Shown: one piece after another, positions 10,369-21,824 of the stretch | Layout of the letters: the number at the start of each line of letters is the position of its first letter | Position numbering within the stretch: position 1 is the first letter of the stretch | Origin: Rebecca billardiae RCC1528 | Lineage: Eukaryota > Protista > Haptophyta | Length of the DNA stretch: 64,000 nucleotides | Assembly: GCA_965240325.2 (NCBI GenBank) | Contig: OZ251231.1 | Span: 434,001-498,000, forward strand | Direction: 5' to 3' | Translations under genes and position numbers: made by a program | Notes under the pieces: model-generated | The model's database searches: none | Seen by the model: the letters and a program-made list of their open reading frames with translations, nothing else | Told to the model about the DNA's origin: nothing

Positions 10369-10451
10369 GCCGACGGAGCGGGGCCGCCCGGGGCGTCGCC
10401 GCGCGGTTTCGTCGGCTGGTCAGCTGCCAAGGTTTGGCGCCGTTGCGCTGG

Positions 10452-11563
10452 CAAGGGTGTCCAGGGTCCGCAACAGCCAGTGCGCAGCGCGGCAGAGGCT
10501 GTGACATCGCGAGGTCGCCGCTCGCCAGTGGGACTCGCCCGCCCGCCGCCGTGCACGGCGGCGGAGCCGCTCGCGCCGTGCGCTCCTGCGGCCGTCGGAA
10601 CGGGCTGCGTAGGCGGCGCGCGGCGTGGGCCGTCGCTGAGCCACCCAGCGCCCCTCGCTGCGCCGCGCGCCTTCCTCGTCCTCGCCTCCTCCGCGCCTTG
10701 AAGCAGCACGCACACGCGCGGCGCCGCCACGAAAGCAGCGCAGGCGCTCGCGTGCAAGCGCGCGCGCGCAGCGCGCGACGGACTCGACTCGGTGTTCGAG
10801 CCTCTGCGGGGACATGCAGTGCTATCACATGCGCGCGCGACGCCACCTCGAGCCTGCGCGTTTGACCGTCAGTGCACGCTGATGCACGTTACAAAATGGT
10901 CTGACTTGGCATCATCACACGTGCGACGGAAGCTTCCACAACGGGCCTTGAGTACGTCGACGCGATCGATGCGGGGACGGTCATGCTTGCGTGCGCTTCT
11001 CTTGTGGTCTCCACGCTTGCTGAGAAGCGCCGCGTACGTAGCTGTCATCGTGTCTTGCCTAAGAAGTCGTCCTGACGCATGGCAGGTTCTGGTCAGATTG
11101 GGCCTACTTCAACACGAGGACGTGTGAGCATTTGGCGCGTGACGGTCACAGCGATGCGCAAGTTCGAGGTGGCGTCGCGCGCGCATGTGATGGTGCTGCA
11201 TGCCCCCGCAGCGGCGCGAGCCCTGAGTCGAGCCCGTCGCGCGCTGCGCGCGCGCGCTTGCACTCGAGCGCCTGCGCTGCTTTCGTGGCGGCGCCGCGCG
11301 TGTGCGTGCTGCTTCAAGGCGCGGAGGAGGCGAGGACGAGGAAGGCGCGCGGCGCAGCGAGGGGCGCTGGGTGGCTCAGCGACGGCCCACGCCGCGCGCC
11401 GCCTACGCAGCCCGTTCCGACGGCCGCAGGAGCGCACGGCGCGAGCGGCTCCGCCGCCGTGCACGGCGGCGGGCGGGCGAGTCCCACTGGCGAGCGGCGA
11501 CCTCGCGATGTCACAGCCTCTGCCGCGCTGCGCACTGGCTGTTGCGGACCCTGGACACCCTTG
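10452..11563. mobile_element. Non-autonomous DNA transposon with ~420-bp TIRs, CAAGGG...CCCTTG termini and 7-bp TSD (P-element-like)
   Basis: Arms ~10452-10871 and ~11140-11563 are reverse complements. The direct repeat GCGCTGG lies at 10445-10451 and 11564-11570. Confidence 0.85.
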
Positions 11564-12024
11564 GCGCTGGCTAGAATCGTATCGCGTCATTGTAGTTTGT
11601 ACTGGCACTCACTGCGTCTGCGACGACTGATGACGCTACTAGTAGATGCCGTGTTAAGGTAGTCTATCTGGCGGTCTGCTGACGATAACCACGCTCAGCT
11701 GCCATGCGAGCGGCACTGACAAGGGTGGAGGGTGGCCAGAATGATCATCTCGGATCGGCATCCTAGTGGTTCCTGCCGCCTCGTCATGGGAGTTGGGACC
11801 TCGGCGGCGCCGCGGTCCGGATACCTACTGGGCGCAGTACGCGTCGTCACTGGCCGAGCCGACGTCTGGGTGCCCCGGCCGGGCCGGAAGCAGGCCGAGT
11901 CGCTGCGCGTGCGCCGCCGGAGCACTTGCCACTCGGCCAGGCAGCGGCGGCCCCGGCTGCCTGCTCGGTGTGCACGGCCCAGCGCGGGAGGCAGCGTCGT
12001 CGGTCTGCCGACTGGTCTGAGTGG

Positions 12025-13158
12025 TCACCGGTCCGCGGCGGTCGTGGCCTCGCCGACGCTGATCATGCACTTGATGGCGGCCCTGCCATCGGCTCCCTGC
12101 CCGCGCATGCACGCGTCGAACGCCTCGCGCGTGCCCGCGTCGGTGAACGCGAAGCGGTGTGTAATCAGCTTCTGCGCCGGCACCTTGCCCTCTGCGAGCA
12201 GCTGTAGGCAGCGTGGGTAAGTGTTCCGGTATCTGAAGACGCCCTCGAGCCGGACCTCGCGCGTGGCGACGCACTCGAGCACGGGGAGCGAGGCGTCGGG
12301 CGCGCCGAGCCCCACGACGACCAGCACGCCCCCGGGGCGCACGGCGAAGAGGCCGGCGCGCAGGCACGGCTCGGCCCCCGTGCAGTCGATGGCAGCGGCG
12401 ATCTCAGGGGATGCGGGCGAGGGCGCGGCTGCCGCTTCCTCGGCCGCGGCGGCGCACAGCGCGCGTGCGGTGGCCTCCGGGCCGGCCGCTGCGGGGGTGA
12501 GCGTGCGCGCGCTCGGCACCAGCTCGCGCAGCGCCTCGAGCCGCGACTCGTTCACGTCGACCACGAGCACGCGCGCGCCGTTTGCGGCCGCGACGATCGC
12601 CGTGAGAGCGCCGATCGGGCCCGCGCCAAAGACGGCGACCGTGTCGCCGCTGCGCACGGCCGCTTTGGTCTCGACGGCGTACACGGCGACGGAGAGCGGC
12701 TCGCACAGAGCCCCGTGCTCCGCGGTGAGTGGCGGCGGCACCACGTGCGCGAACGCCGCGGGGTGCACCACCTCGGCGCACATGGCGCCGTGCACGGGCG
12801 GCGTCGCAAAGAAGCGAATGGACGGGCAGAGGTTGTACCGCCCTTCCTCGCAGCGCGCGCACGCGCCGCACGGGATGCCGGGCTCGAGGGCGACGATGTC
12901 GCCCACCTTGACCGTGCCGGGCGCGACGCCCTCCGCCGCGACCTCGACGACCGCGCCCGCGCACTCGTGGCCGAGGACCATCGGGTCTTTGACGACAAAC
13001 TTGCCGATGGCGCCGTGCGTGAGGTAGTGCACGTCCGAGCCGCAGATGCCGCACGCGACGATACGGACGCGCACCTCGCCCGGGTTGAGCGCGGCCGAGC
13101 GGGGCACCTGCGCGATCGCCATCTCCCCGCGACCGCGCAGGAGCAATGCCGGTTGCAT
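12025..13158 (-). CDS. Zinc-dependent sorbitol/xylitol (L-iditol 2-) dehydrogenase
   Basis: CGICGSDVHY, LGHE, structural Zn site CGACARCEEGRYNLC, FATPPVHG, GAGPIG and GVFRY motifs. Confidence 0.93.
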   Translation of the reverse strand: MQPALLLRGRGEMAIAQVPRSAALNPGEVRVRIVACGICGSDVHYLTHGAIGKFVVKDPMVLGHECAGAVVEVAAEGVAPGTVKVGDIVALEPGIPCGACARCEEGRYNLCPSIRFFATPPVHGAMCAEVVHPAAFAHVVPPPLTAEHGALCEPLSVAVYAVETKAAVRSGDTVAVFGAGPIGALTAIVAAANGARVLVVDVNESRLEALRELVPSARTLTPAAAGPEATARALCAAAAEEAAAAPSPASPEIAAAIDCTGAEPCLRAGLFAVRPGGVLVVVGLGAPDASLPVLECVATREVRLEGVFRYRNTYPRCLQLLAEGKVPAQKLITHRFAFTDAGTREAFDACMRGQGADGRAAIKCMISVGEATTAADR

Positions 13159-13314
13159 GGCGATGACGTCCGCGGCCGTGATCTACGCCCTTGGCGGTGA
13201 TTGGTCGATTCTGATCGGGCGGGTAACAGTTGGCTGAATCGTAGTACTTGGCGCGGTGAGCGGTCCGGTCGCGGGTCGTCACGCCCCGCTTGCCGAGGCT
13301 TGGACCGCTCTGCC

Positions 13315-14280
13315 ATGTCGCTCGTTCGGCTCGCGCGCGTGCTCGCGGCGCCGCGCGCGATTGGCGCGCGCGCGCTGAGCGCCGCCCCGTCCTTCTCTGG
13401 GGAGACAGCCGACCTGTACGAGGTGGTGATGGCGCAGCACGCGCAGCCCAACGGCCCGTGGCCGCTGGTGGTCGAGGAGGTGCGCGACGCGCTGCCAGAG
13501 AACCACGAGGCGACCGTCCTCGACCTCGGGTCGGGTCCGGGCGAGCCGGCGCTGACGATCGCGACGACGTTCCCGGGGCTGGACGTGCTCTGCACCGACG
13601 TCGCCCCCGACATGGTCGCCAAAGCTCGCGTGCGTACCGACGCGTGCGACAACATCCGGTGCGAGGAGCTCGACATGCAGGACATGCACCTCGTCTCGAA
13701 CGACTCGATCAACATCGTCACGTGCGTGTTCGGGCTGATGTTCCCCGCTGACAAGAAGAAGGCGCTTGCCGAGATCTACCGCGTGCTCCGTCCGGGCGGC
13801 GTGCTGATCGCCACGTGGCCGACCGAGATGAAGATGCTGGATGCGACCAAGGTGGTGATGGAGGCGGCGGTCGGCGGGCCCCCGCCGCCGATGCCAATGG
13901 ACCCGCTCGCGCTCAAGGAGCCGTTCCTCCTCGCGCGGATGCTGACGGACGCGGGGCTCGTCGTCACAAAGACGCGCGAGAGCGAGTACGACTTCTTCCT
14001 CGGCAAGGACGAGGAGCTCGCCTTCAAAATCGCGACCATCCCGCTCGCTGGGAGCCTGGAGGAGCTCGCCACGTCGCGAGGACGCGGCTCGCTGCTCGGC
14101 GCGCTCGGCCACCACATGTCGGGCGAGGACGTGTCGAGCAAGGCCCGCAAGGCGTTCGCGCACTTCCTCGATGAGCACGGGCTGCGGCGTGCGGACGGCG
14201 AAATCGTGATCGGCCCGGCCAAGTTTGGCCTGATCGTCGCAGAGAAGCCGGGCGGGGAGAAGAAGGAGAAAAAGGACTGA
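13315..14280 (+). CDS. Class I SAM-dependent methyltransferase with mitochondrial-type presequence
   Basis: Motif I VLDLGSGPGEP, TDVAPDM, CVFGLMF and EIYRVLRPGG. Arg/Ala/Leu-rich N-terminus. Confidence 0.88.
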   Translation: MSLVRLARVLAAPRAIGARALSAAPSFSGETADLYEVVMAQHAQPNGPWPLVVEEVRDALPENHEATVLDLGSGPGEPALTIATTFPGLDVLCTDVAPDMVAKARVRTDACDNIRCEELDMQDMHLVSNDSINIVTCVFGLMFPADKKKALAEIYRVLRPGGVLIATWPTEMKMLDATKVVMEAAVGGPPPPMPMDPLALKEPFLLARMLTDAGLVVTKTRESEYDFFLGKDEELAFKIATIPLAGSLEELATSRGRGSLLGALGHHMSGEDVSSKARKAFAHFLDEHGLRRADGEIVIGPAKFGLIVAEKPGGEKKEKKD

Positions 14281-15536: not shown

Positions 15537-15983
15537 GGCGAGTTCGGACGACGACGTTTTGTGGACGACGGTGGGGCGAGGACGACGGGCGCTGGCGCGC
15601 CGCGAGGCGGCCGCAGCCCTCATCCAGGCCTCGCAGGCGGACGGCTGAACGAATTTTCCGGCGGCGCAGCCATCGGCGACGGCTCCATGGGCGGTGACAG
15701 TTGGCGGGCGTCAATCTCGCCTGCCTGAGCTGTGTGCGTCTCTTATTCTTAGTATAAGGCGAGTTCGGACGACGACGTTTTGTGGACGACGGTGGGGCGA
15801 GGACGACGGGCGCTGGCGCGCCGCGAGGCGGCCGCAGCCCTCGTCCAGGCCTCGCAGGCGGACGGCTGAACGAATTTTTCCGGCGGCGCTACCATCGGCG
15901 ACGGCTTCATGGGCGGTGACAGTTGGCGGGCGTCAATCTCGCCTGCCTGAGCTGTGTGCGTCTCTTATTCTTAGTAAACTGTA
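15537..15983 (+). repeat. Tandem duplication of a ~221-bp unit ending in the 49-bp dispersed motif
   Basis: 15537-15754 and 15758-15983 are near-identical. A diverged inverted copy lies at ~16900-17056. Confidence 0.9.
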
Positions 15984-16832
15984 GTTGGGCGGACACCGAC
16001 GGCTCGGGGCTAGCTGCTGTCGACCCAAAGGACCATCAAATGATGGTCCTTTGGTCGACCGCGGCTCACAAGTTCCGCCTTCCGGGCTTCCGGTCGCGCG
16101 ACGAGCCAGCGATTGTCCGACGACGATGCCATCAGTCGATCGATCATCTCATTGTCGTCATCGGAAATACTACTCAGAAAATATAGGCGGCGGCGCAGCG
16201 CATGCAGCGGTTCAAAATGCGCTGCCTTGGAATACCGCGCCTCCACAACGCCAAACGGGCTGTCGCCGGCCTCCCGCAGCTGCTCAGAGTCAGGCGCCGC
16301 TAGGTCGGCAGGCGTCCACATCGACTACGAGGCCCTCTCCCTCAGGCTCATGGCTCATGCCTCATCCAGGTGCCACCGGAAGGCGCTCGGATGCGGCGGC
16401 CTCTTCTGCCCAGCCGCCGCGTGCCCCAGCCAGCAGCGACCAGGCTGTAGGCTGAGTAGCGCCCGGAAGCGGAGTGCTGTGACTGAGTCATCAGTCATGA
16501 GTGCAGGCCGGCTCTGACATTTATCCCGCGGCCGCCCCGGCTGACCCGTAGTACATAGGTACTAATATTTCATACTATATGACTACCAAGGTAGGGGGCA
16601 GGGCTGCGGGTCACAGTGTCACACGGCCTGACTGACCTGGCTGGGCGGTGAAGGCGCGGACGCGTACCGGCTACGTGCCTGCTGCACTCAGTCAGCAGTG
16701 AGGCTGACGCCTGCCCCGGTTGCATGCCACGACGATGTTAAATATGTAGTATCATAGCTACAAGCCTACAGAACAGTTACTAGTACTACCATATACGACC
16801 CGTGGCTATGAATACTGCTAGTCGGCTACTGT

Positions 16833-16872
16833 TGCCTGAGCTGTGTGCGTCTCTTATTCTTAGTAAACTGTA
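16833..16872 (+). repeat. 5'-truncated copy of the 49-bp dispersed motif
   Basis: TGCCTGAGCTGTGTGCGTCTCTTATTCTTAGTAAACTGTA is identical to the 3' part of the copies at 15935 and 52560. Confidence 0.9.
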
Positions 16873-18295
16873 TTAGTATTTAGTAGGCAGTAGCTAAGAG
16901 GCGCACACTACGACAGCTCAGCCAAGATTGACGCCGCCCGCCAACTGTCACCGGCCATGAAGCCGTCGCCGATGGAAGCGCCGTCAGAAGATTCATTCAG
17001 CCGTCCGCCTGCGAGGCCTGGATGAAGGCTGCGGCCGCCTCGCGGCGCGCCAGCGGCCCAGCGCCGCGCCCCGTCGACCGCCGCCACAATTCCGCCATCA
17101 CATGAAAGCGCATCGCGAGTCGTCATAAAATGCGCCTCAATATTTTGCCCCACGGAGCCGGCATCGTGCATCCGGCGGACTCCACCGCTCCGTGTCTCCC
17201 GGCCCGGGCGGGCCGCGGCGGTGATCGTGCGGGCATCCGTCGACGAGCTCGTTGACAATGGAGCTGCGGCCCCTGCTGCGCAGCTTCGACGCGTCGCGCA
17301 GGGTATGGCGCCACCGCTTGCTGGATCTTGTTCGCGACGCGCCGGCCACACAATCGCCCACCGACCCGGGCCTGGCTGCCGCCCGCGACTACCTCTTCCT
17401 CCGCCGTGCGCTCGCTGCGCGGCGCGAGCTGACAGAGCGGTATGAGCTCGAACGACCCGAAAAGCGTGAGATGGACAAGGCCCGCGATGCGGCTGCGCGG
17501 GTCGGGCTGGCGCTACCCAAGCGCGCCGAATGATCACAGGTTTACTGGTGCGCACAGCCGGTGTGTCAGATCCTATGGCGGTCCGAGGTGCACGGTTCGC
17601 AAGCAAGCTCAGCGCCAAGGGGCCCAAGGTGCATCCGAAGGCGGAGCTGTCACCCTTTTTGCCCACACGCCCTGCCAGTCGTGATCATCGTCGACGCGAC
17701 CCAGGGCCCTTTGCCGTGCCGCTCGCCGTCCTCCTGTGCCGGACATCGCTCGGATCGGCGAGGAGACTCGGATATGGTCAATGGTCCATTATCAACTTTG
17801 AGTCAATGATGGTGACTGGCGGCTTACGGGATTTATGAAGCACCAGCCTGATGCGACGAACGTTGAGGACGAGATTGTTCATCAGCAATGTCGATAGCCG
17901 ATACATGTGGGCGGTCACTAGTTGGCAGTGTACGTGGCAGCGGCCGCGCGCCGCGCGCGGGCGGCCTCGCGTGCCACTCGCGCGGGCCGTCGTGGCGCCC
18001 TCGGCTCGGAGTCGGGGGGCTGCTCAGTCTGCTCGTCATGTCTGCTGGCTCTGCTTGCGACGCCGACACTCGCCCGCACTCGGCCGACGACTCAGTTGCC
18101 AGCAGTGGGCTCGCTGACGCTGATGTGACACGGGCATGAGGCGCCTGACTCGGCTGAGGCCCGACGGTCCGCCTGGTGGCCTGGTGAGTCTGGTCCGATT
18201 TCGATTCGTTGAGCTCACCTTGCCGCCCCTTCTGTCGGAGTGCCAAGCTGCTGTCTTGCTGATGCGGCTCGCAGTCAGGAGCACCGTCCACCGCA

Positions 18296-19671
18296 TTAGC
18301 CCTGGTCGCCAGTCCAGAGAGTGAGGTTGTCGCGCAGGAGCTGCAAGATCAGCACATCGTCCTCGTATGACTCCTCATCGAGCGTGCCCAGTTCGGCGAG
18401 CGCATCGTCAAACGCGCTCTGCGCAAGCTGGCGCGCCTCCTCTGGCTTGTTCTGCACCTCATACATGAAGACTGAGTAGTTGAGCGCGAGGCCGAGCCGG
18501 ATCCGGTTGGTCACCTGCAGCTTCTCGCGTGCGATCCCCTGCGCTCTCGCGTACGAGTCAGCGGCCGCCTCCTCGTCGTTTGCTGCCGACCTGAACTCTG
18601 CAAGATACCCGTGGTAGTCACCCTGCAGGACGAGCAGCATATGTGTAGCCGCAGGAGGAGGTGGATAGTCAACACATGACATCCCCCAAAGGCAAACCCA
18701 CTGGTCCACAGCCACCAACCAAGCCAGGGGAGCACACGGCCACACACACACATGCGTGGCACGTCATCAAGGAAAGCACACGGTGCAGCTGCGCGAGCGC
18801 GCACCTTCATCTTGTAGTAAAAGACCTCGTCTTCCGCGTTTTCCGCGGTCGAGGCCTTCGGGATCAACACATTATTGAGGAGCCCGAGGACGTCATTGCA
18901 GATCTGCTCAAGCTCACGCTGGCTCGTACTCAGGTACCCCGCAATCGTCTCCACCTCCATGGAGTTCGGATCCTTCGCTTCCTCTGCCGACTTGAGCTCA
19001 TTGAGGATGCGGATGGATGCGCGATGGGGGGCTGCAAAGTTCTTGTAAGCAGCCGCCAGCAGGCTGCGCTCCTCGCGAGTGAGGCCGCCATTAGAAGACG
19101 TGGCGAGCTGCATCATGGACTCGGCCATTTCTTCGTACCGCTCCATCTGCTGGAGCAGCTTCGCCTTGTACAGCAACTCAGATCGCTCTCGTGCAGGCAA
19201 GGGAGACGAAGAAGAAGATGGCGGGGGAGACGGAGGCGGTGAGATAGGAATCTTTGGTTCCCAACGCACCGGAGTGCCCATGAACGAACGCATATTCGTG
19301 AACGCGGCCTTGGACATCGTGAAGTCGCCGCCTTTCGTGATGTCAGCGTACATGTAGAACTCCTTCTTCTCCTTCTGTTCGTCTGGGTGTTGACCCGTCT
19401 GCGTCGGCCTGAGCGTCCTGACCCCGTTCTTGAGGAGCTCGGCCCAGGTCAGCTCACCGTCGCCATTCGCGTCCACCTTCTCGAAGTGATAGAAGGCCTG
19501 GCTCTCCCAATCCGCGTCCGACTTCTCCAATGATGGGTACGCCTCGCGCTTGCCAGAGTCCGCCTCGGCCGCGCTGCCGGCAGTGACGGCGACCGCGACG
19601 AGTGCGAGCACCATGATCCCGGCAGCCGTCGCACAGAACCCAAGTGCGTGCGTCTTCGTGATCGTCGTCAT
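18296..19671 (-). CDS. Divergent 14-3-3 protein fused to an N-terminal hydrophobic signal/anchor, EF-hand and Pro/Ser linker (intron 18623-18804)
   Basis: 14-3-3 motifs [28 protein letters not shown]|[18 protein letters not shown] and [13 protein letters not shown]-hand loop [12 protein letters not shown]. Hydrophobic segment [14 protein letters not shown]. All of the N-terminal parts are in the same exon as the first half of the 14-3-3 domain. Confidence 0.88.
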
Positions 19672-19821: not shown

Positions 19822-21824
19822 CAAGGGGAGTCAGGGTACAGCACGTCCAGTTGGGCTGCAGCTGGAGCTTGGGTACAGGTGCATCTAATCTCCCGTAACG
19901 GTCGAGCACCCCTCGCTAGGCGAGGGGTGCGGCGGAAACGACAGTGGAAACCCGGGGACTTTGTCCCCGCGCCCCTATCGCGGGCTCTGGCGCGCGAACG
20001 CTTTGTCACTACTGGCTCCCCGAGGTGGAGAGCGGCGCTCCGTGCACCAACAAAGACATCCCCAGCCGCATGTTGCCACTCGACACCTCGTCTCGCCTCG
20101 CGCGGAGCCAACTTGTGGTGTGCGGGAGCCACCCGTAGCACACTGGGCCGTGTAGCGACGCGCGTGGCGGGTCAACAGTGCATCGCGAAGGCGTCGCACG
20201 CGCAATCCGTTGAGTACATACTCATGTCTGTCCCATGGCACGTCGTGCGCCGCCGCGTGCGCCGATGCACTCCCGACTCGCGACGCGCCGCGTGCAGCAC
20301 AGCCTGTGCTTCGGGTAGCTCCCGCACACCACAAGTTGGCTCCGCGCGAAGCGAGACGAGGTGTCGACAGGCGGTGCATGACGTGCCATGGGACAGACAT
20401 GAGTATGTACTCAACGGATTGCGCGTACGACGCCTTCGCGATGCACTGTTGACCCGCCACACGCGTCGCTACACGGCCCAGTGTGCTACGGGTGGCTCCC
20501 GCACACCACAAGTTGGCTCCGCGCGAGGCGAGACGAGGTGTCGAGTGGCAACATGCGGCTGGGGATGTCTTTGTTGGTGCACGGAGCGCCGCTCTCCACC
20601 TCGGGGATCCAGTAGTGACAAAGCGTTCGCGCGCCAGAGCCCGCGATAGGGGCGCGGGGACAAAGTCCCCGGGTTTCCACTGTTGTTTCTGTTGGCGGTG
20701 TCGCAGAGCGACCCGCCGGCCGTTACAGGGCCATTAGAAGGCGGTGGCTTGGGTACAAAAGCTTCCCGCGGCGCAGCGGCACTCGCCGCCGCCGCCGCCG
20801 TGGAGGGGCGGTTGTGGCGCGCACGGCGTGAGCCGCTGCGGGCGCTGAGGTGCGCGCGACGGCGGCGCGCCCGGCGGCGCTGCTGTAGGAGGCCACTGCC
20901 CTCCTCTCTGCCCCGCGCGCTTCGCTCGTCGTCGCCGTCGCCGCGCCTGCGACCAGCGCGCACGCGAGCGCCGCACCGCCCGGAAGCCGGGGCAATCTCA
21001 GCCGTGACTGCGCATGTGCGTCGCGACCTGGTCGGCCCAGCGCGCGAGGCGCGTGCGGGCGAGGCAGGGCCAGTGTGGCCGCGCGCCATGCCGCCTCAAG
21101 TAAGCCCATCTGAGCGTACAACAGGGAACTGAGCACGTGTGTCTGGTTGGCCGCTTGGACTCGGTGTCGAGTCTTCAAGCAATGCACGGGCCATCGTCGA
21201 GGCGATCTCGAGGCACTCAGTCAAAACGTCAGTTCAGCGCGCAGACGACCTGGGCGAGAGTCACTGACGATACATGACTCGCATGATCACAAAAGGCTCT
21301 GCAACTATCGCGTCTGTACGCCTACTGTCTCGATCGTGCACACTGACGTCTGCGCTTGGGTGCCGCATTGTTTGTCAACGTTGTCGACAGAGGTGCAAGG
21401 CCCGCGACATGCCCACTGGCGCAAGGTCGAGGCGGCATGGCGCGCGGCCACACTGGCCCTGCCTCGCCCGCACGCGCCTCGCGCGCTGGGCCGACCAGGT
21501 CGCGACGCACATGCGCAGTCACGACTGAGATTGCCCCGGCTTCCGGGCGGTGCGGCGCTCGCGTGCGCGCTAGTCGCAGGCGCGGCGACGGCGACGACGA
21601 GCGAAGCGCGCGGGGCAGAGAGGAGGGCAGTGGCCTCCTACAGCAGCGCCGCCGGGCGCGCCGCCGTCGCGCGCACCTCAGCGCCCGCAGCGGCTCACGC
21701 CGTGCGCGCCACAACCGCCCCTCCACGGCGGCGGCGGCGGCGAGTGCCGCTGCGCCGCGGGAAGCTTTTGTACCCAAGCTCCAGCTGCAGCCCAACTGGA
21801 CGTGCTGTACCCTGACTCCCCTTG
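19822..21824. mobile_element. Second CAAGGG...CCCTTG long-TIR element with 7-bp TSD (about 1123 bp without the nested insert)
   Basis: Left arm 19822-19875 plus 20756-~21093 is the reverse complement of ~21433-21824. TSD TGCCGCC at 19815-19821 and 21825-21831. Confidence 0.85.
19876..20746. mobile_element. Nested foldback/MULE-like element, 871 bp, 9-bp TSD
   Basis: TSD GCTTGGGTA at 19867-19875 and 20747-20755. The empty site is preserved in the host element's right arm (~21765-21785). Arms ~19943-20240 and ~20380-20682 are inverted repeats. Confidence 0.85.

What the first reader, a model, noticed from the sequence alone, without database searches (positions are those of the whole stretch)
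18296..19671. Signal-sequence + EF-hand + 14-3-3 fusion with a broken phosphopeptide pocket
Seen: one exon encodes a hydrophobic leader, a canonical EF-hand loop ([12 protein letters not shown]) plus a degenerate second one ([11 protein letters not shown]), a [11 protein letters not shown] linker and then the 14-3-3 domain. The canonical KGDYYRY reads KGDYHGY, so the Arg127-equivalent is Gly while the K49, R56 and Y128 equivalents remain. YKDST has become YEDDV. Known: 14-3-3s are normally stand-alone cytosolic dimers that bind pSer/pThr through K49/R56/R127/Y128. Inference: a secreted, luminal or membrane-anchored Ca2+-responsive 14-3-3-fold protein with altered ligand specificity. I do not know this architecture from described proteins. 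The frame is intact across a proper intron. TE-rich flanks suggest recent exon shuffling.
Basis: partly seen in the sequence, partly recalled or inferred. Interest (0 to 1): 0.75.

Follow-up and report, generated by a model that had tools for sequence, protein, structure and literature searches.

The report
Leader plus EF-hand fused to 14-3-3
A very GC-rich haptophyte alga carries an intact two-exon gene that joins a hydrophobic leader and a calcium-binding EF-hand loop to a fast-evolving 14-3-3 domain lacking one of its four phosphate-binding residues, a design I found nowhere else, but no RNA data or ortholog yet shows that it is expressed or conserved.

Summary
On the minus strand, exon 1 (19671..18805) and exon 2 (18622..18296) are joined across a 182-nt GT-AG phase-0 intron. 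Pfam 14-3-3 positions 1-116 end exactly at the end of exon 1, and 117-223 start at exon 2.

- **N-terminal part:** upstream lie one strongly hydrophobic segment, one perfect EF-hand loop (the only PROSITE-pattern match in the six-frame window, none in random windows), a weakly supported degenerate second unit, and a Pro/Ser linker.
- **Pocket:** R127 is Gly. K49, R56, R60, Y128, N173 and N224 remain.
- **Coding signal:** codon usage marks residues 1-135 as coding in this frame, as strongly as the 14-3-3 part. DNA upstream of the ATG and the intron look non-coding. The linker looks non-coding too.
- **Origin:** the 14-3-3 part sits on a terminal branch 9-16 times the median and shares its intron site with a stand-alone algal 14-3-3. 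It is therefore a diverged duplicate, not a recent shuffle.
- **Relatives:** no relative of the N-terminal 160 residues, and no protein with this architecture, appeared in any search.
- **Untested:** expression, location and binding.

Verdict: a real, intact, lineage-restricted 14-3-3 variant of moderate interest. The scan had not noted it before on other DNA.

The parts
19567..19671 (-). Start codon and hydrophobic leader (residues 1-35). It is either a signal peptide with small residues at -3/-1 before Glu36, or a signal anchor.
   Evidence: First ATG of the open frame. Kyte-Doolittle mean 2.39 over residues 11-29, and small -3/-1 residues at 33/35. Coding LLR +1.02 per codon, against +0.13 just upstream of the ATG.
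19435..19473 (-). Canonical EF-hand Ca2+-binding loop (residues 67-79).
   Evidence: Only PS00018 match in the six-frame window, with 0 matches in 40 random windows. Pfam EF-hand_5/_7/_1/_6 hits are below threshold.
19309..19344 (-). Degenerate second EF-hand-like loop (residues 110-121). Thr at loop position 3 and Lys at position 12 make it probably not Ca2+-binding.
   Evidence: Sequence reading. Weak in-register internal similarity to the first unit, E 0.002. No profile hit.
19192..19266 (-). Pro/Ser-rich linker (residues 136-160) with non-coding-like composition. An unverified in-frame 84-nt GT..AG candidate intron (19269..19186) overlaps it.
   Evidence: LLR -1.30 per codon and GC3 0.40, against 0.78-0.86 in the rest of the gene. 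Donor GTGCGT resembles the proven donor GTGCGC. The acceptor context GAG is poor.
18805..19191 (-). 14-3-3 domain, first half (helices up to the KMK motif). K49, R56 and R60 are kept.
   Evidence: PF00244 positions 1-116, E 1e-29. PDB 14-3-3 chains, E 1e-26.
18623..18804 (-). Intron, 182 nt, GT-AG, phase 0, between KMK and GDY.
   Evidence: Pfam profile is continuous across it. Non-coding LLR. Same site and phase as the 90-nt intron of a stand-alone algal 14-3-3 (L002).
18296..18622 (-). 14-3-3 domain, second half, plus stop codon. Holds GDYHGY (R127G) and YEDDV.
   Evidence: PF00244 positions 117-223, E 3e-37. PDB chains, E 6e-35.
18608..18610 (-). Codon GGG at the Arg127-equivalent position. 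It is one base away from CGG.
   Evidence: Arg in 69 of 71 comparable motifs.
19822..21824 (.). 2003-bp transposon, 150 nt upstream of the start codon. It has CAAGGGG termini, a 7-bp target duplication TGCCGCC and nested long palindromic arms.
   Evidence: It is context, not part of the coding gene.

Best explanation
This is a genuine, lineage-restricted protein-coding gene.

**How it arose.** A duplicate of the alga's ordinary stand-alone 14-3-3 gene, still carrying that gene's intron, became joined at its 5' end to an older coding sequence. That sequence encodes a secretory leader and an EF-hand pair with one working loop. The join runs through a short stretch that still looks like former non-coding DNA. 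The copy then diverged fast under a constraint that kept the frame and the fold.

**How it most likely works (inferred).**
- The leader takes the chain into the ER, either as a cleaved signal peptide or with the N-terminus in the cytosol. The EF-hand module and the 14-3-3 domain therefore lie in the lumen or outside the cell.
- The 14-3-3 part probably still dimerises. R18, E89, Y82 and L12 are kept.
- It probably still clamps extended peptides through N173, N224 and the hydrophobic wall. Without Arg127, phosphate recognition is weakened, so binding would be phospho-independent or would favour acidic ligands.
- At luminal Ca2+ levels the single EF loop would be a structural or Ca2+-dependent docking element.

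**Shown:** gene structure, domain content, residue changes, coding signal, divergence and absence of relatives.
**Inferred:** expression, topology, dimerisation and binding.
For: - **Splice and frame.** The profile junction 116|117 is exact and the 397-codon frame is intact.
- **Coding signal.** It runs from the ATG onward, equal to that of the 14-3-3 part. Upstream DNA and the intron score as non-coding.
- **EF loop.** It is not a chance match.
- **Leader.** There is one strongly hydrophobic N-terminal segment with small -3/-1 residues. The N-flank is positive and the C-flank is net acidic.
- **Selection on the frame.** Substitution-only neutral walks from the nearest canonical coding sequence to the observed divergence stay open in only 0.75% of 2000 trials.
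- **Fold conservation.** 79 of 109 columns that are at least 90% conserved are kept, including the fold core.
- **Origin.** The intron site is shared with a stand-alone algal 14-3-3.
- **Linker.** It has a non-coding composition, as expected for a read-through join.
- **Pocket chemistry.** The phosphate pocket is K49/R56/R127/Y128, and N173/N224 hold the peptide backbone (PMC9523730).
Against: - **No expression evidence.** No RNA run holds the locus. The only run gives DNA-like 151-nt contigs.
- **No conservation evidence.** No ortholog was found, so conservation of the fusion and dN/dS cannot be tested.
- **EF-hand support is thin.** The Pfam hits are below threshold. The fold of residues 36-140 could not be predicted, with pLDDT 37.
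- **Promoter.** A 2-kb transposon sits 150 nt upstream of the ATG and may have cut the promoter.
- **Glycosylation.** The only N-glycosylation sequons are at N173 (NYS) and N224 (NLT), the two groove asparagines. In the ER these could be glycosylated and block the groove, which argues against a working groove in the lumen.
- **Leader length.** The hydrophobic stretch is long for a cleaved signal peptide, so topology is open.
Confidence: 0.5

Rival explanations
1. Membrane-tethered, cytosol-facing adaptor. The leader acts as an uncleaved signal anchor that leaves the C-terminal part in the cytosol, as shown for the Arabidopsis calmodulin-like proteins CML4 and CML5. The EF-hand then senses cytosolic Ca2+ next to an endomembrane, and the 14-3-3 dimer recruits clients there.
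For: The hydrophobic stretch is long (about 23-27 residues, KD 2.39), more like an anchor than a signal peptide core. EF-hands work as sensors at cytosolic Ca2+ levels. The groove asparagines sit in sequons that would be at risk in the ER. PMC4915527 gives a precedent (abstract, listed).
Against: The charge balance (Lys6 plus the free N-terminus against a net acidic C-flank) favours the N-terminus in the cytosol and the C-terminus translocated. Small residues at -3/-1 fit cleavage. No experimental or predictor result is at hand.
Confidence: 0.18
2. Wrong or partial gene model. The functional product is a cytosolic divergent 14-3-3 translated from Met127 or Met131, or with other 5' exons. Residues 1-126 would then belong to a separate, older reading frame that merely lies in phase. 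A variant of this idea is that the linker is an unspliced in-frame 84-nt intron (19269..19186), so the fusion exists but without the Pro/Ser linker.
For: The linker scores as non-coding (LLR -1.30, GC3 0.40). It starts with GTGCGT, close to the proven donor, and ends after a long pyrimidine tract. In-frame Met127 and Met131 lie just upstream of it. No transcript data exist.
Against: There is no stop codon between the EF-hand part and the 14-3-3 part, and both have the same strong in-frame codon signal. The only acceptors available are GAG, a poor context, whereas the proven intron uses CAG. A 14-3-3 that begins at Met131 would still carry a 30-residue non-canonical extension.
Confidence: 0.2
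3. Silent or decaying chimera: a duplicated 14-3-3 that lost its function and its promoter to transposon activity and has simply not yet acquired a frame break.
For: It sits in a TE-rich neighbourhood with a TE 150 nt upstream of the ATG. It has a very long branch, has lost a key Arg, and has no ortholog or RNA evidence.
Against: An open frame at this divergence is expected in under 1% of neutral walks, even without indels. GC3 of 0.78-0.86 is kept, against 0.60 in the intron. The fold core and most groove residues are conserved.
Confidence: 0.12

Closest known systems
Canonical stand-alone 14-3-3 proteins (Pfam PF00244). Examples are human gamma/zeta/epsilon, yeast BMH1 (PDB 5n6n), and the algal stand-alone genes of L002 and L009.
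   Same: The full-length domain matches across both exons. K49, R56, R60, K120, Y128, N173, E180, N224, W228 and the hydrophobic wall (I166, L172, L216, I217, L220) are kept. The intron is at the same site and phase as in L002. Lineage-typical motifs are shared ([17 protein letters not shown]).
   Different: It carries a 160-residue N-terminal extension with a leader and an EF-hand. It has R127G, P165R, K212E, S214D, T215V and 25 other changes at columns that are at least 90% conserved. Identity is only 46-62%, and the terminal branch is 9-16 times the median.
Arabidopsis CML4/CML5, calmodulin-like proteins with an N-terminal signal anchor (PMC4915527).
   Same: An EF-hand module is tied to the endomembrane system by an N-terminal hydrophobic segment.
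   Different: They have four EF-hands and no 14-3-3 domain. Their topology is shown to be cytosol-facing. There is no sequence relationship (no hits).
Secretory-pathway EF-hand proteins (CREC family: reticulocalbin, calumenin). This comparison rests on my own knowledge and was not tested.
   Same: A signal peptide is followed by EF-hand units acting at high Ca2+.
   Different: CREC proteins have six or seven EF-hands and an ER retention signal. Here there is one canonical loop, no retention motif at the C-terminus, and no detectable homology.
Other divergent 14-3-3 paralogues with a damaged phosphate pocket. Examples are the environmental transcript L057 (Ser at the R127 site) and the first domain of the tandem 14-3-3 P0001 (Gly at the R127 site).
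   Same: They are natural 14-3-3-fold proteins that have lost Arg127.
   Different: Neither has a leader or an EF-hand. Neither is close to this gene. L057 is far more degenerate.
14-3-3-like domains built into larger proteins (SMG5/6/7, yeast Ebs1; PMC2190716, listed).
   Same: The 14-3-3 fold is used as one module of a multi-domain protein.
   Different: Those are remote, TPR-like relatives that PF00244 does not recognise. This gene is a true PF00244 member.

Membership tests
14-3-3 (PF00244) | Profile match above Pfam's gathering score over the full domain | tested here: met
   104 bits (exon 1, profile 1-116) and 129 bits (exon 2, profile 117-223), against a cut-off of 33.2. More than 120 PDB 14-3-3 chains match each exon.
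14-3-3 (PF00244) | Phosphate-binding set K49, R56, R127, Y128 (PMC9523730) | tested here: not met
   K49, R56 and Y128 are present. R127 is Gly. Arg occurs in 69 of 71 comparable motifs.
14-3-3 (PF00244) | Backbone-holding N173 and N224 and the hydrophobic groove wall | tested here: met
   N173, N224, I166, L172, L216, I217, L220, L227 and W228 are kept. V46A and P165R are changed.
14-3-3 (PF00244) | Dimer through the N-terminal helices | tested here: inconclusive
   L12, R18, Y82 and E89 are kept. A16M, K85T, E14Q and R83L are changed. There is no structural or biochemical test.
14-3-3 (PF00244) | Nine-helix fold | not tested
14-3-3 (PF00244) | Stand-alone cytosolic protein of about 250 residues | tested here: not met
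   397 codons, with a 160-residue extension that begins with a hydrophobic leader.
EF-hand | 12-residue Ca2+-binding loop with ligands at positions 1, 3, 5, 12 (PROSITE PS00018) | tested here: met
   Residues 67-79 match. It is the only hit in the window, with none in 40 random windows.
EF-hand | Pfam EF-hand profile above the gathering score | tested here: not met
   Best score 18.7-19.2 bits, against cut-offs of 25-30.
EF-hand | Paired helix-loop-helix units | tested here: inconclusive
   The second unit lies in register at 43-residue spacing, with weak internal similarity (E 0.002). It lacks ligands at positions 3 and 12. The AF2 model was unusable, with pLDDT 37.
Secretory signal peptide / signal anchor | N-terminal hydrophobic core, positive n-region, small -3/-1 residues | tested here: inconclusive
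   Heuristics only: KD 2.39, Lys6, and Ser33/Ala35 before Glu36. No trained predictor was available.

The most novel reading that the evidence does not exclude
This would be the first 14-3-3 sent into the secretory pathway by a classical N-terminal signal. There it would act as a Ca2+-loaded, phospho-independent dimeric clamp for luminal or extracellular clients. That would give a genetic route for the 14-3-3 proteins repeatedly found outside cells, for example in the coccolith matrix proteomes of other haptophytes (PMC11685980).
Probability: 0.25. Interest if true: 0.7.

Novelty: new variant of a known kind. Interest (0 to 1): 0.45.

Why it matters
14-3-3 proteins are among the most conserved eukaryotic adaptors. 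They are almost always stand-alone, cytosolic and phospho-dependent.

A copy that carries its own targeting leader and a cis-linked Ca2+ site, and has lost one phosphate ligand, would do three things. It would show how far the fold can be repurposed. It would offer a natural test of what the groove does without Arg127. It would also link Ca2+ and 14-3-3 signalling in one chain.

The gene also illustrates how a fusion forms. The join still has the composition of non-coding DNA, while both partners carry mature codon usage.

If the locus proves silent, it is simply a curiosity of a transposon-rich genome.

Tried and rejected
- **Word-index protein searches.** Searches with exon 1, with residues 1-160 and with the 14-3-3 half gave nothing, nothing, and one canonical 14-3-3. 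The index is too coarse for this sequence.
- **Exhaustive representative search with exon 1.** It found 2116 hits, none below 1e-30, and all listed ones match only the 14-3-3 half. The long N-terminal extensions among them are mis-called upstream sequence or vector fusions of canonical proteins, not EF-hands.
- **ESM Atlas.** It gave only weak EF-hand leads for residues 1-160 and no usable hit for exon 1.
- **Metagenome scans.** Exon 1 gave no relatives. Exon 2 gave 55 canonical or divergent stand-alone 14-3-3s and no ortholog.
- **Reads.** One run holds 30% of the sampled words as read-length contigs. It shows no joints and no RNA label, so it says nothing on expression.
- **AF2 of residues 36-140 without an alignment.** pLDDT was 37, which is unusable, so no fold search was made.
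- **NCBIfam.** Only noise.
- **Scan's own notes by sequence.** Blank.
- **Rejected: the EF loop is chance**.
- **Rejected: the gene is a retrocopy.** It keeps an intron at the host site.
- **Rejected: the gene rides inside a transposon.** No flanking repeat pair was found.
- **Rejected: W59I and Y126H are special.** Leu or Phe at position 59 and His at 126 occur in canonical relatives.
- **Left out under the operators' rule.** Every search or fold of the joined two-exon protein was omitted. The exons were handled separately by reference.

Full report
**1. What is there**

The gene lies on the minus strand.
- The first ATG of a long open frame is at 19671.
- Exon 1 runs to 18805 (289 codons).
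- A 182-nt intron follows (18804..18623, GTGCGC...CTGCAG, phase 0).
- Exon 2 runs from 18622 to the stop at 18296.

Pfam's 14-3-3 model matches residues 169-289 of exon 1 to profile positions 1-116 (E 1e-29). It matches exon 2 to positions 117-223 (E 3e-37). The proposed splice is therefore exact to the residue. Both exons match more than 120 solved 14-3-3 chains.

Every search or fold of the joined product was left out.

**2. The N-terminal 160 residues**

- **Leader.** Residues 11-29 form the only strongly hydrophobic segment (Kyte-Doolittle mean 2.39). They are preceded by Lys6 and followed by small residues (Ser33, Ala35) and an acidic stretch. This fits a cleavable signal peptide or a signal anchor with the C-terminus translocated. 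No trained predictor was available, so topology stays inferred.
- **First EF-hand.** Residues 67-79 fit the PROSITE EF-hand loop pattern. This is the only match in the six-frame translation of the whole window, and 40 random windows of the same dinucleotide make-up gave none. Pfam EF-hand models hit the same place but below their thresholds.
- **Second unit.** A second unit (loop at 110-121) lacks the ligands at positions 3 and 12. It aligns in register with the first only weakly (27% over 26 residues, E 0.002 for that single comparison). I call it plausible, not shown.
- **Fold.** An AF2 model of residues 36-140 without an alignment was unusable, with pLDDT 37.

**3. Is the N-terminal part really coding and part of the same gene?**

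I trained a codon table on two Pfam-supported genes of this window: an alcohol dehydrogenase and a methyltransferase. I then scored each segment in all three frames.

| Segment | In-frame score per codon |
|---|---|
| Residues 1-40 | +1.02 |
| Residues 41-100 | +0.82 |
| Residues 101-135 | +1.66 |
| 14-3-3 part, exon 1 | +1.08 |
| 14-3-3 part, exon 2 | +1.09 |
| 153 nt upstream of the ATG | +0.13 |
| Intron | -0.23 |
| 3' flank | -0.64 |
| Linker, residues 136-160 | -1.30 |

For all the coding segments the other two frames are strongly negative. The frame is thus coding from the ATG onward, with no stop before the 14-3-3 domain.

The linker is the exception. Its GC3 is 0.40, against 0.78-0.86 elsewhere. 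There are two readings.
- It may be former non-coding DNA that became the join of the fusion. It could also be a young slippage-made Pro/Ser tract.
- It may be an unspliced in-frame 84-nt intron (19269..19186). This has a GTGCGT donor and a long pyrimidine tract, but only a poor GAG acceptor.

Either way the EF-hand part and the 14-3-3 part stay in one frame.

**4. The 14-3-3 domain**

I compared it with 20 full-length canonical domains. It keeps 79 of the 109 columns that are at least 90% conserved.
- **Kept:** K49, R56, R60, K120, Y128, N173, E180, N224, W228, I166, L172, L216, I217, L220, and the dimer residues L12, R18, Y82, E89.
- **Changed:** R127G (a single-base step from CGG), P165R, V46A, K212E, S214D, T215V, M218L, A16M and others.

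The phosphate pocket is defined as K49/R56/R127/Y128, and N173/N224 hold the peptide backbone (PMC9523730). So one of the four phosphate ligands is gone while the peptide-holding frame remains.

Loss of this Arg is rare but not unique. Among the best 150 representatives the motif shows 69 R, 1 G and 1 H. An environmental transcript (L057) has Ser there. His126 and a non-Trp residue at position 59 are normal in relatives.

**5. Origin and age**

The nearest relatives are stand-alone 14-3-3s of marine algae. They share lineage motifs such as [11 protein letters not shown] and LDEESY.

One of them lies on a 454-kb environmental eukaryotic contig (L002). It has a 90-nt intron at exactly the same site and phase. 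The 14-3-3 part is therefore a DNA-level duplicate of a host gene, not a retrocopy.

Identity to L002 is 46% for the first half and 62% for the second. In separate trees of the two halves, the query's terminal branch is 6.29 against a median of 0.38, and 1.42 against 0.15. Its placement among the L002/L009-type sequences is only weakly supported.

This argues against a recent shuffle. In 2000 substitution-only neutral walks from the L002 coding sequence to the observed divergence, only 0.75% kept the frame open. The frame has therefore been under selection for most of that time.

**6. Relatives and architecture**

- No protein in the exhaustive search of 1.84 billion representatives reached E 1e-30. 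All listed hits match only residues of about 160-289.
- The long N-termini among them are mis-called upstream DNA or vector sequence. None carries an EF-hand loop.
- The N-terminal 160 residues found nothing.
- Of the 55 environmental loci found with exon 2, every complete ORF is a stand-alone 14-3-3.
- Paper searches gave no description of an EF-hand/14-3-3 or signal-peptide/14-3-3 fusion.
- An InterPro architecture query could not be run, so 'absent from databases' holds only within these searches.

**7. Expression**

This is untested. One public run holds 30% of the sampled words. Laid on the locus, it gives four identical 151-nt contigs at depth 2-3 and no joints. That is compatible with plain genomic DNA.

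**8. Surroundings**

Earlier notes of this scan place the genome in a very GC-rich haptophyte of the Pavlovales group.

A 2003-bp transposon (19822-21824) sits 150 nt upstream of the ATG. It has CAAGGGG termini, a 7-bp target duplication TGCCGCC and two nested long palindromes. It has the terminal motif and duplication length of the family noted earlier at 10445-11570 as sitting in promoters.

More repeats lie at 15537-17072. No repeat pair encloses the gene.

**9. Reading**

| Reading | Confidence |
|---|---|
| Real lineage-restricted gene, product enters the secretory pathway | 0.5 |
| Cytosol-facing membrane tether | 0.18 |
| Mis-modelled 5' part or spliced-out linker | 0.2 |
| Silent chimera | 0.12 |

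In the best reading the product carries one Ca2+ site and uses a 14-3-3 dimer with weakened phosphate dependence.

One caveat argues against a working groove in the lumen. The only N-glycosylation sequons are at N173 and N224, the two groove asparagines.

**10. Verdict**

This is a new variant of a known kind, of moderate interest until expression or an ortholog is shown.

Noticed in passing
window 19822-21824: A 2003-bp transposon with CAAGGGG...CCCCTTG termini and a perfect 7-bp target duplication TGCCGCC. Inside are two long palindromes: arms 19935-20254/20370-20689 (98% complementary) and 20747-21097/21429-21779 (99%). It lies 150 nt upstream of the gene's ATG. Its terminal motif and duplication length match the family noted at 10445-11570.
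   Followed up: partly
window 19192-19266: The Pro/Ser linker has GC3 of 0.40 and a negative codon score inside an otherwise strongly coding frame. It is either a fossil of the non-coding DNA through which the fusion formed, or an in-frame 84-nt intron (19269..19186).
   Followed up: partly
window 15537-17072: Block of direct repeats (121 and 101 nt, spacing about 221 nt) and inverted repeats (138-nt arms, 88%) downstream of the gene. It is probably another transposon or a cluster of fragments.
   Followed up: no
window 12028-13158 (-) and 13201-14277 (+): Neighbouring ORFs with clear Pfam matches: a zinc alcohol dehydrogenase (ADH_N, ADH_zinc_N) and a class I SAM methyltransferase. They are divergently arranged.
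   Followed up: no
L002 3154-3957: Stand-alone algal 14-3-3 on a 454-kb environmental eukaryotic contig. Prokaryote-style gene calling split it into two ORFs at a 90-nt intron, at the same KMK|xDY site as the window's gene.
   Followed up: yes
L057 46-903 and L056 153-914: Environmental transcripts encoding very degenerate 14-3-3-like proteins. L057 has Ser at the R127 site and a changed K49 region, and both have Ala-rich basic tails. They are another lineage of pocket-less 14-3-3 folds in marine protists.
   Followed up: no
P0001 (514 aa): Tandem double 14-3-3 protein. Its first domain also has Gly at the R127 site (DYYGY) and a changed AYKN motif.
   Followed up: no
L001 11-475: A 14-3-3 first half (shares KDPNS.EV and KASTAE with the window's gene, 52% identity) that breaks off after GDY and overlaps an RCC1-repeat gene on the other strand. 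It is a truncated copy or an assembly chimera.
   Followed up: no
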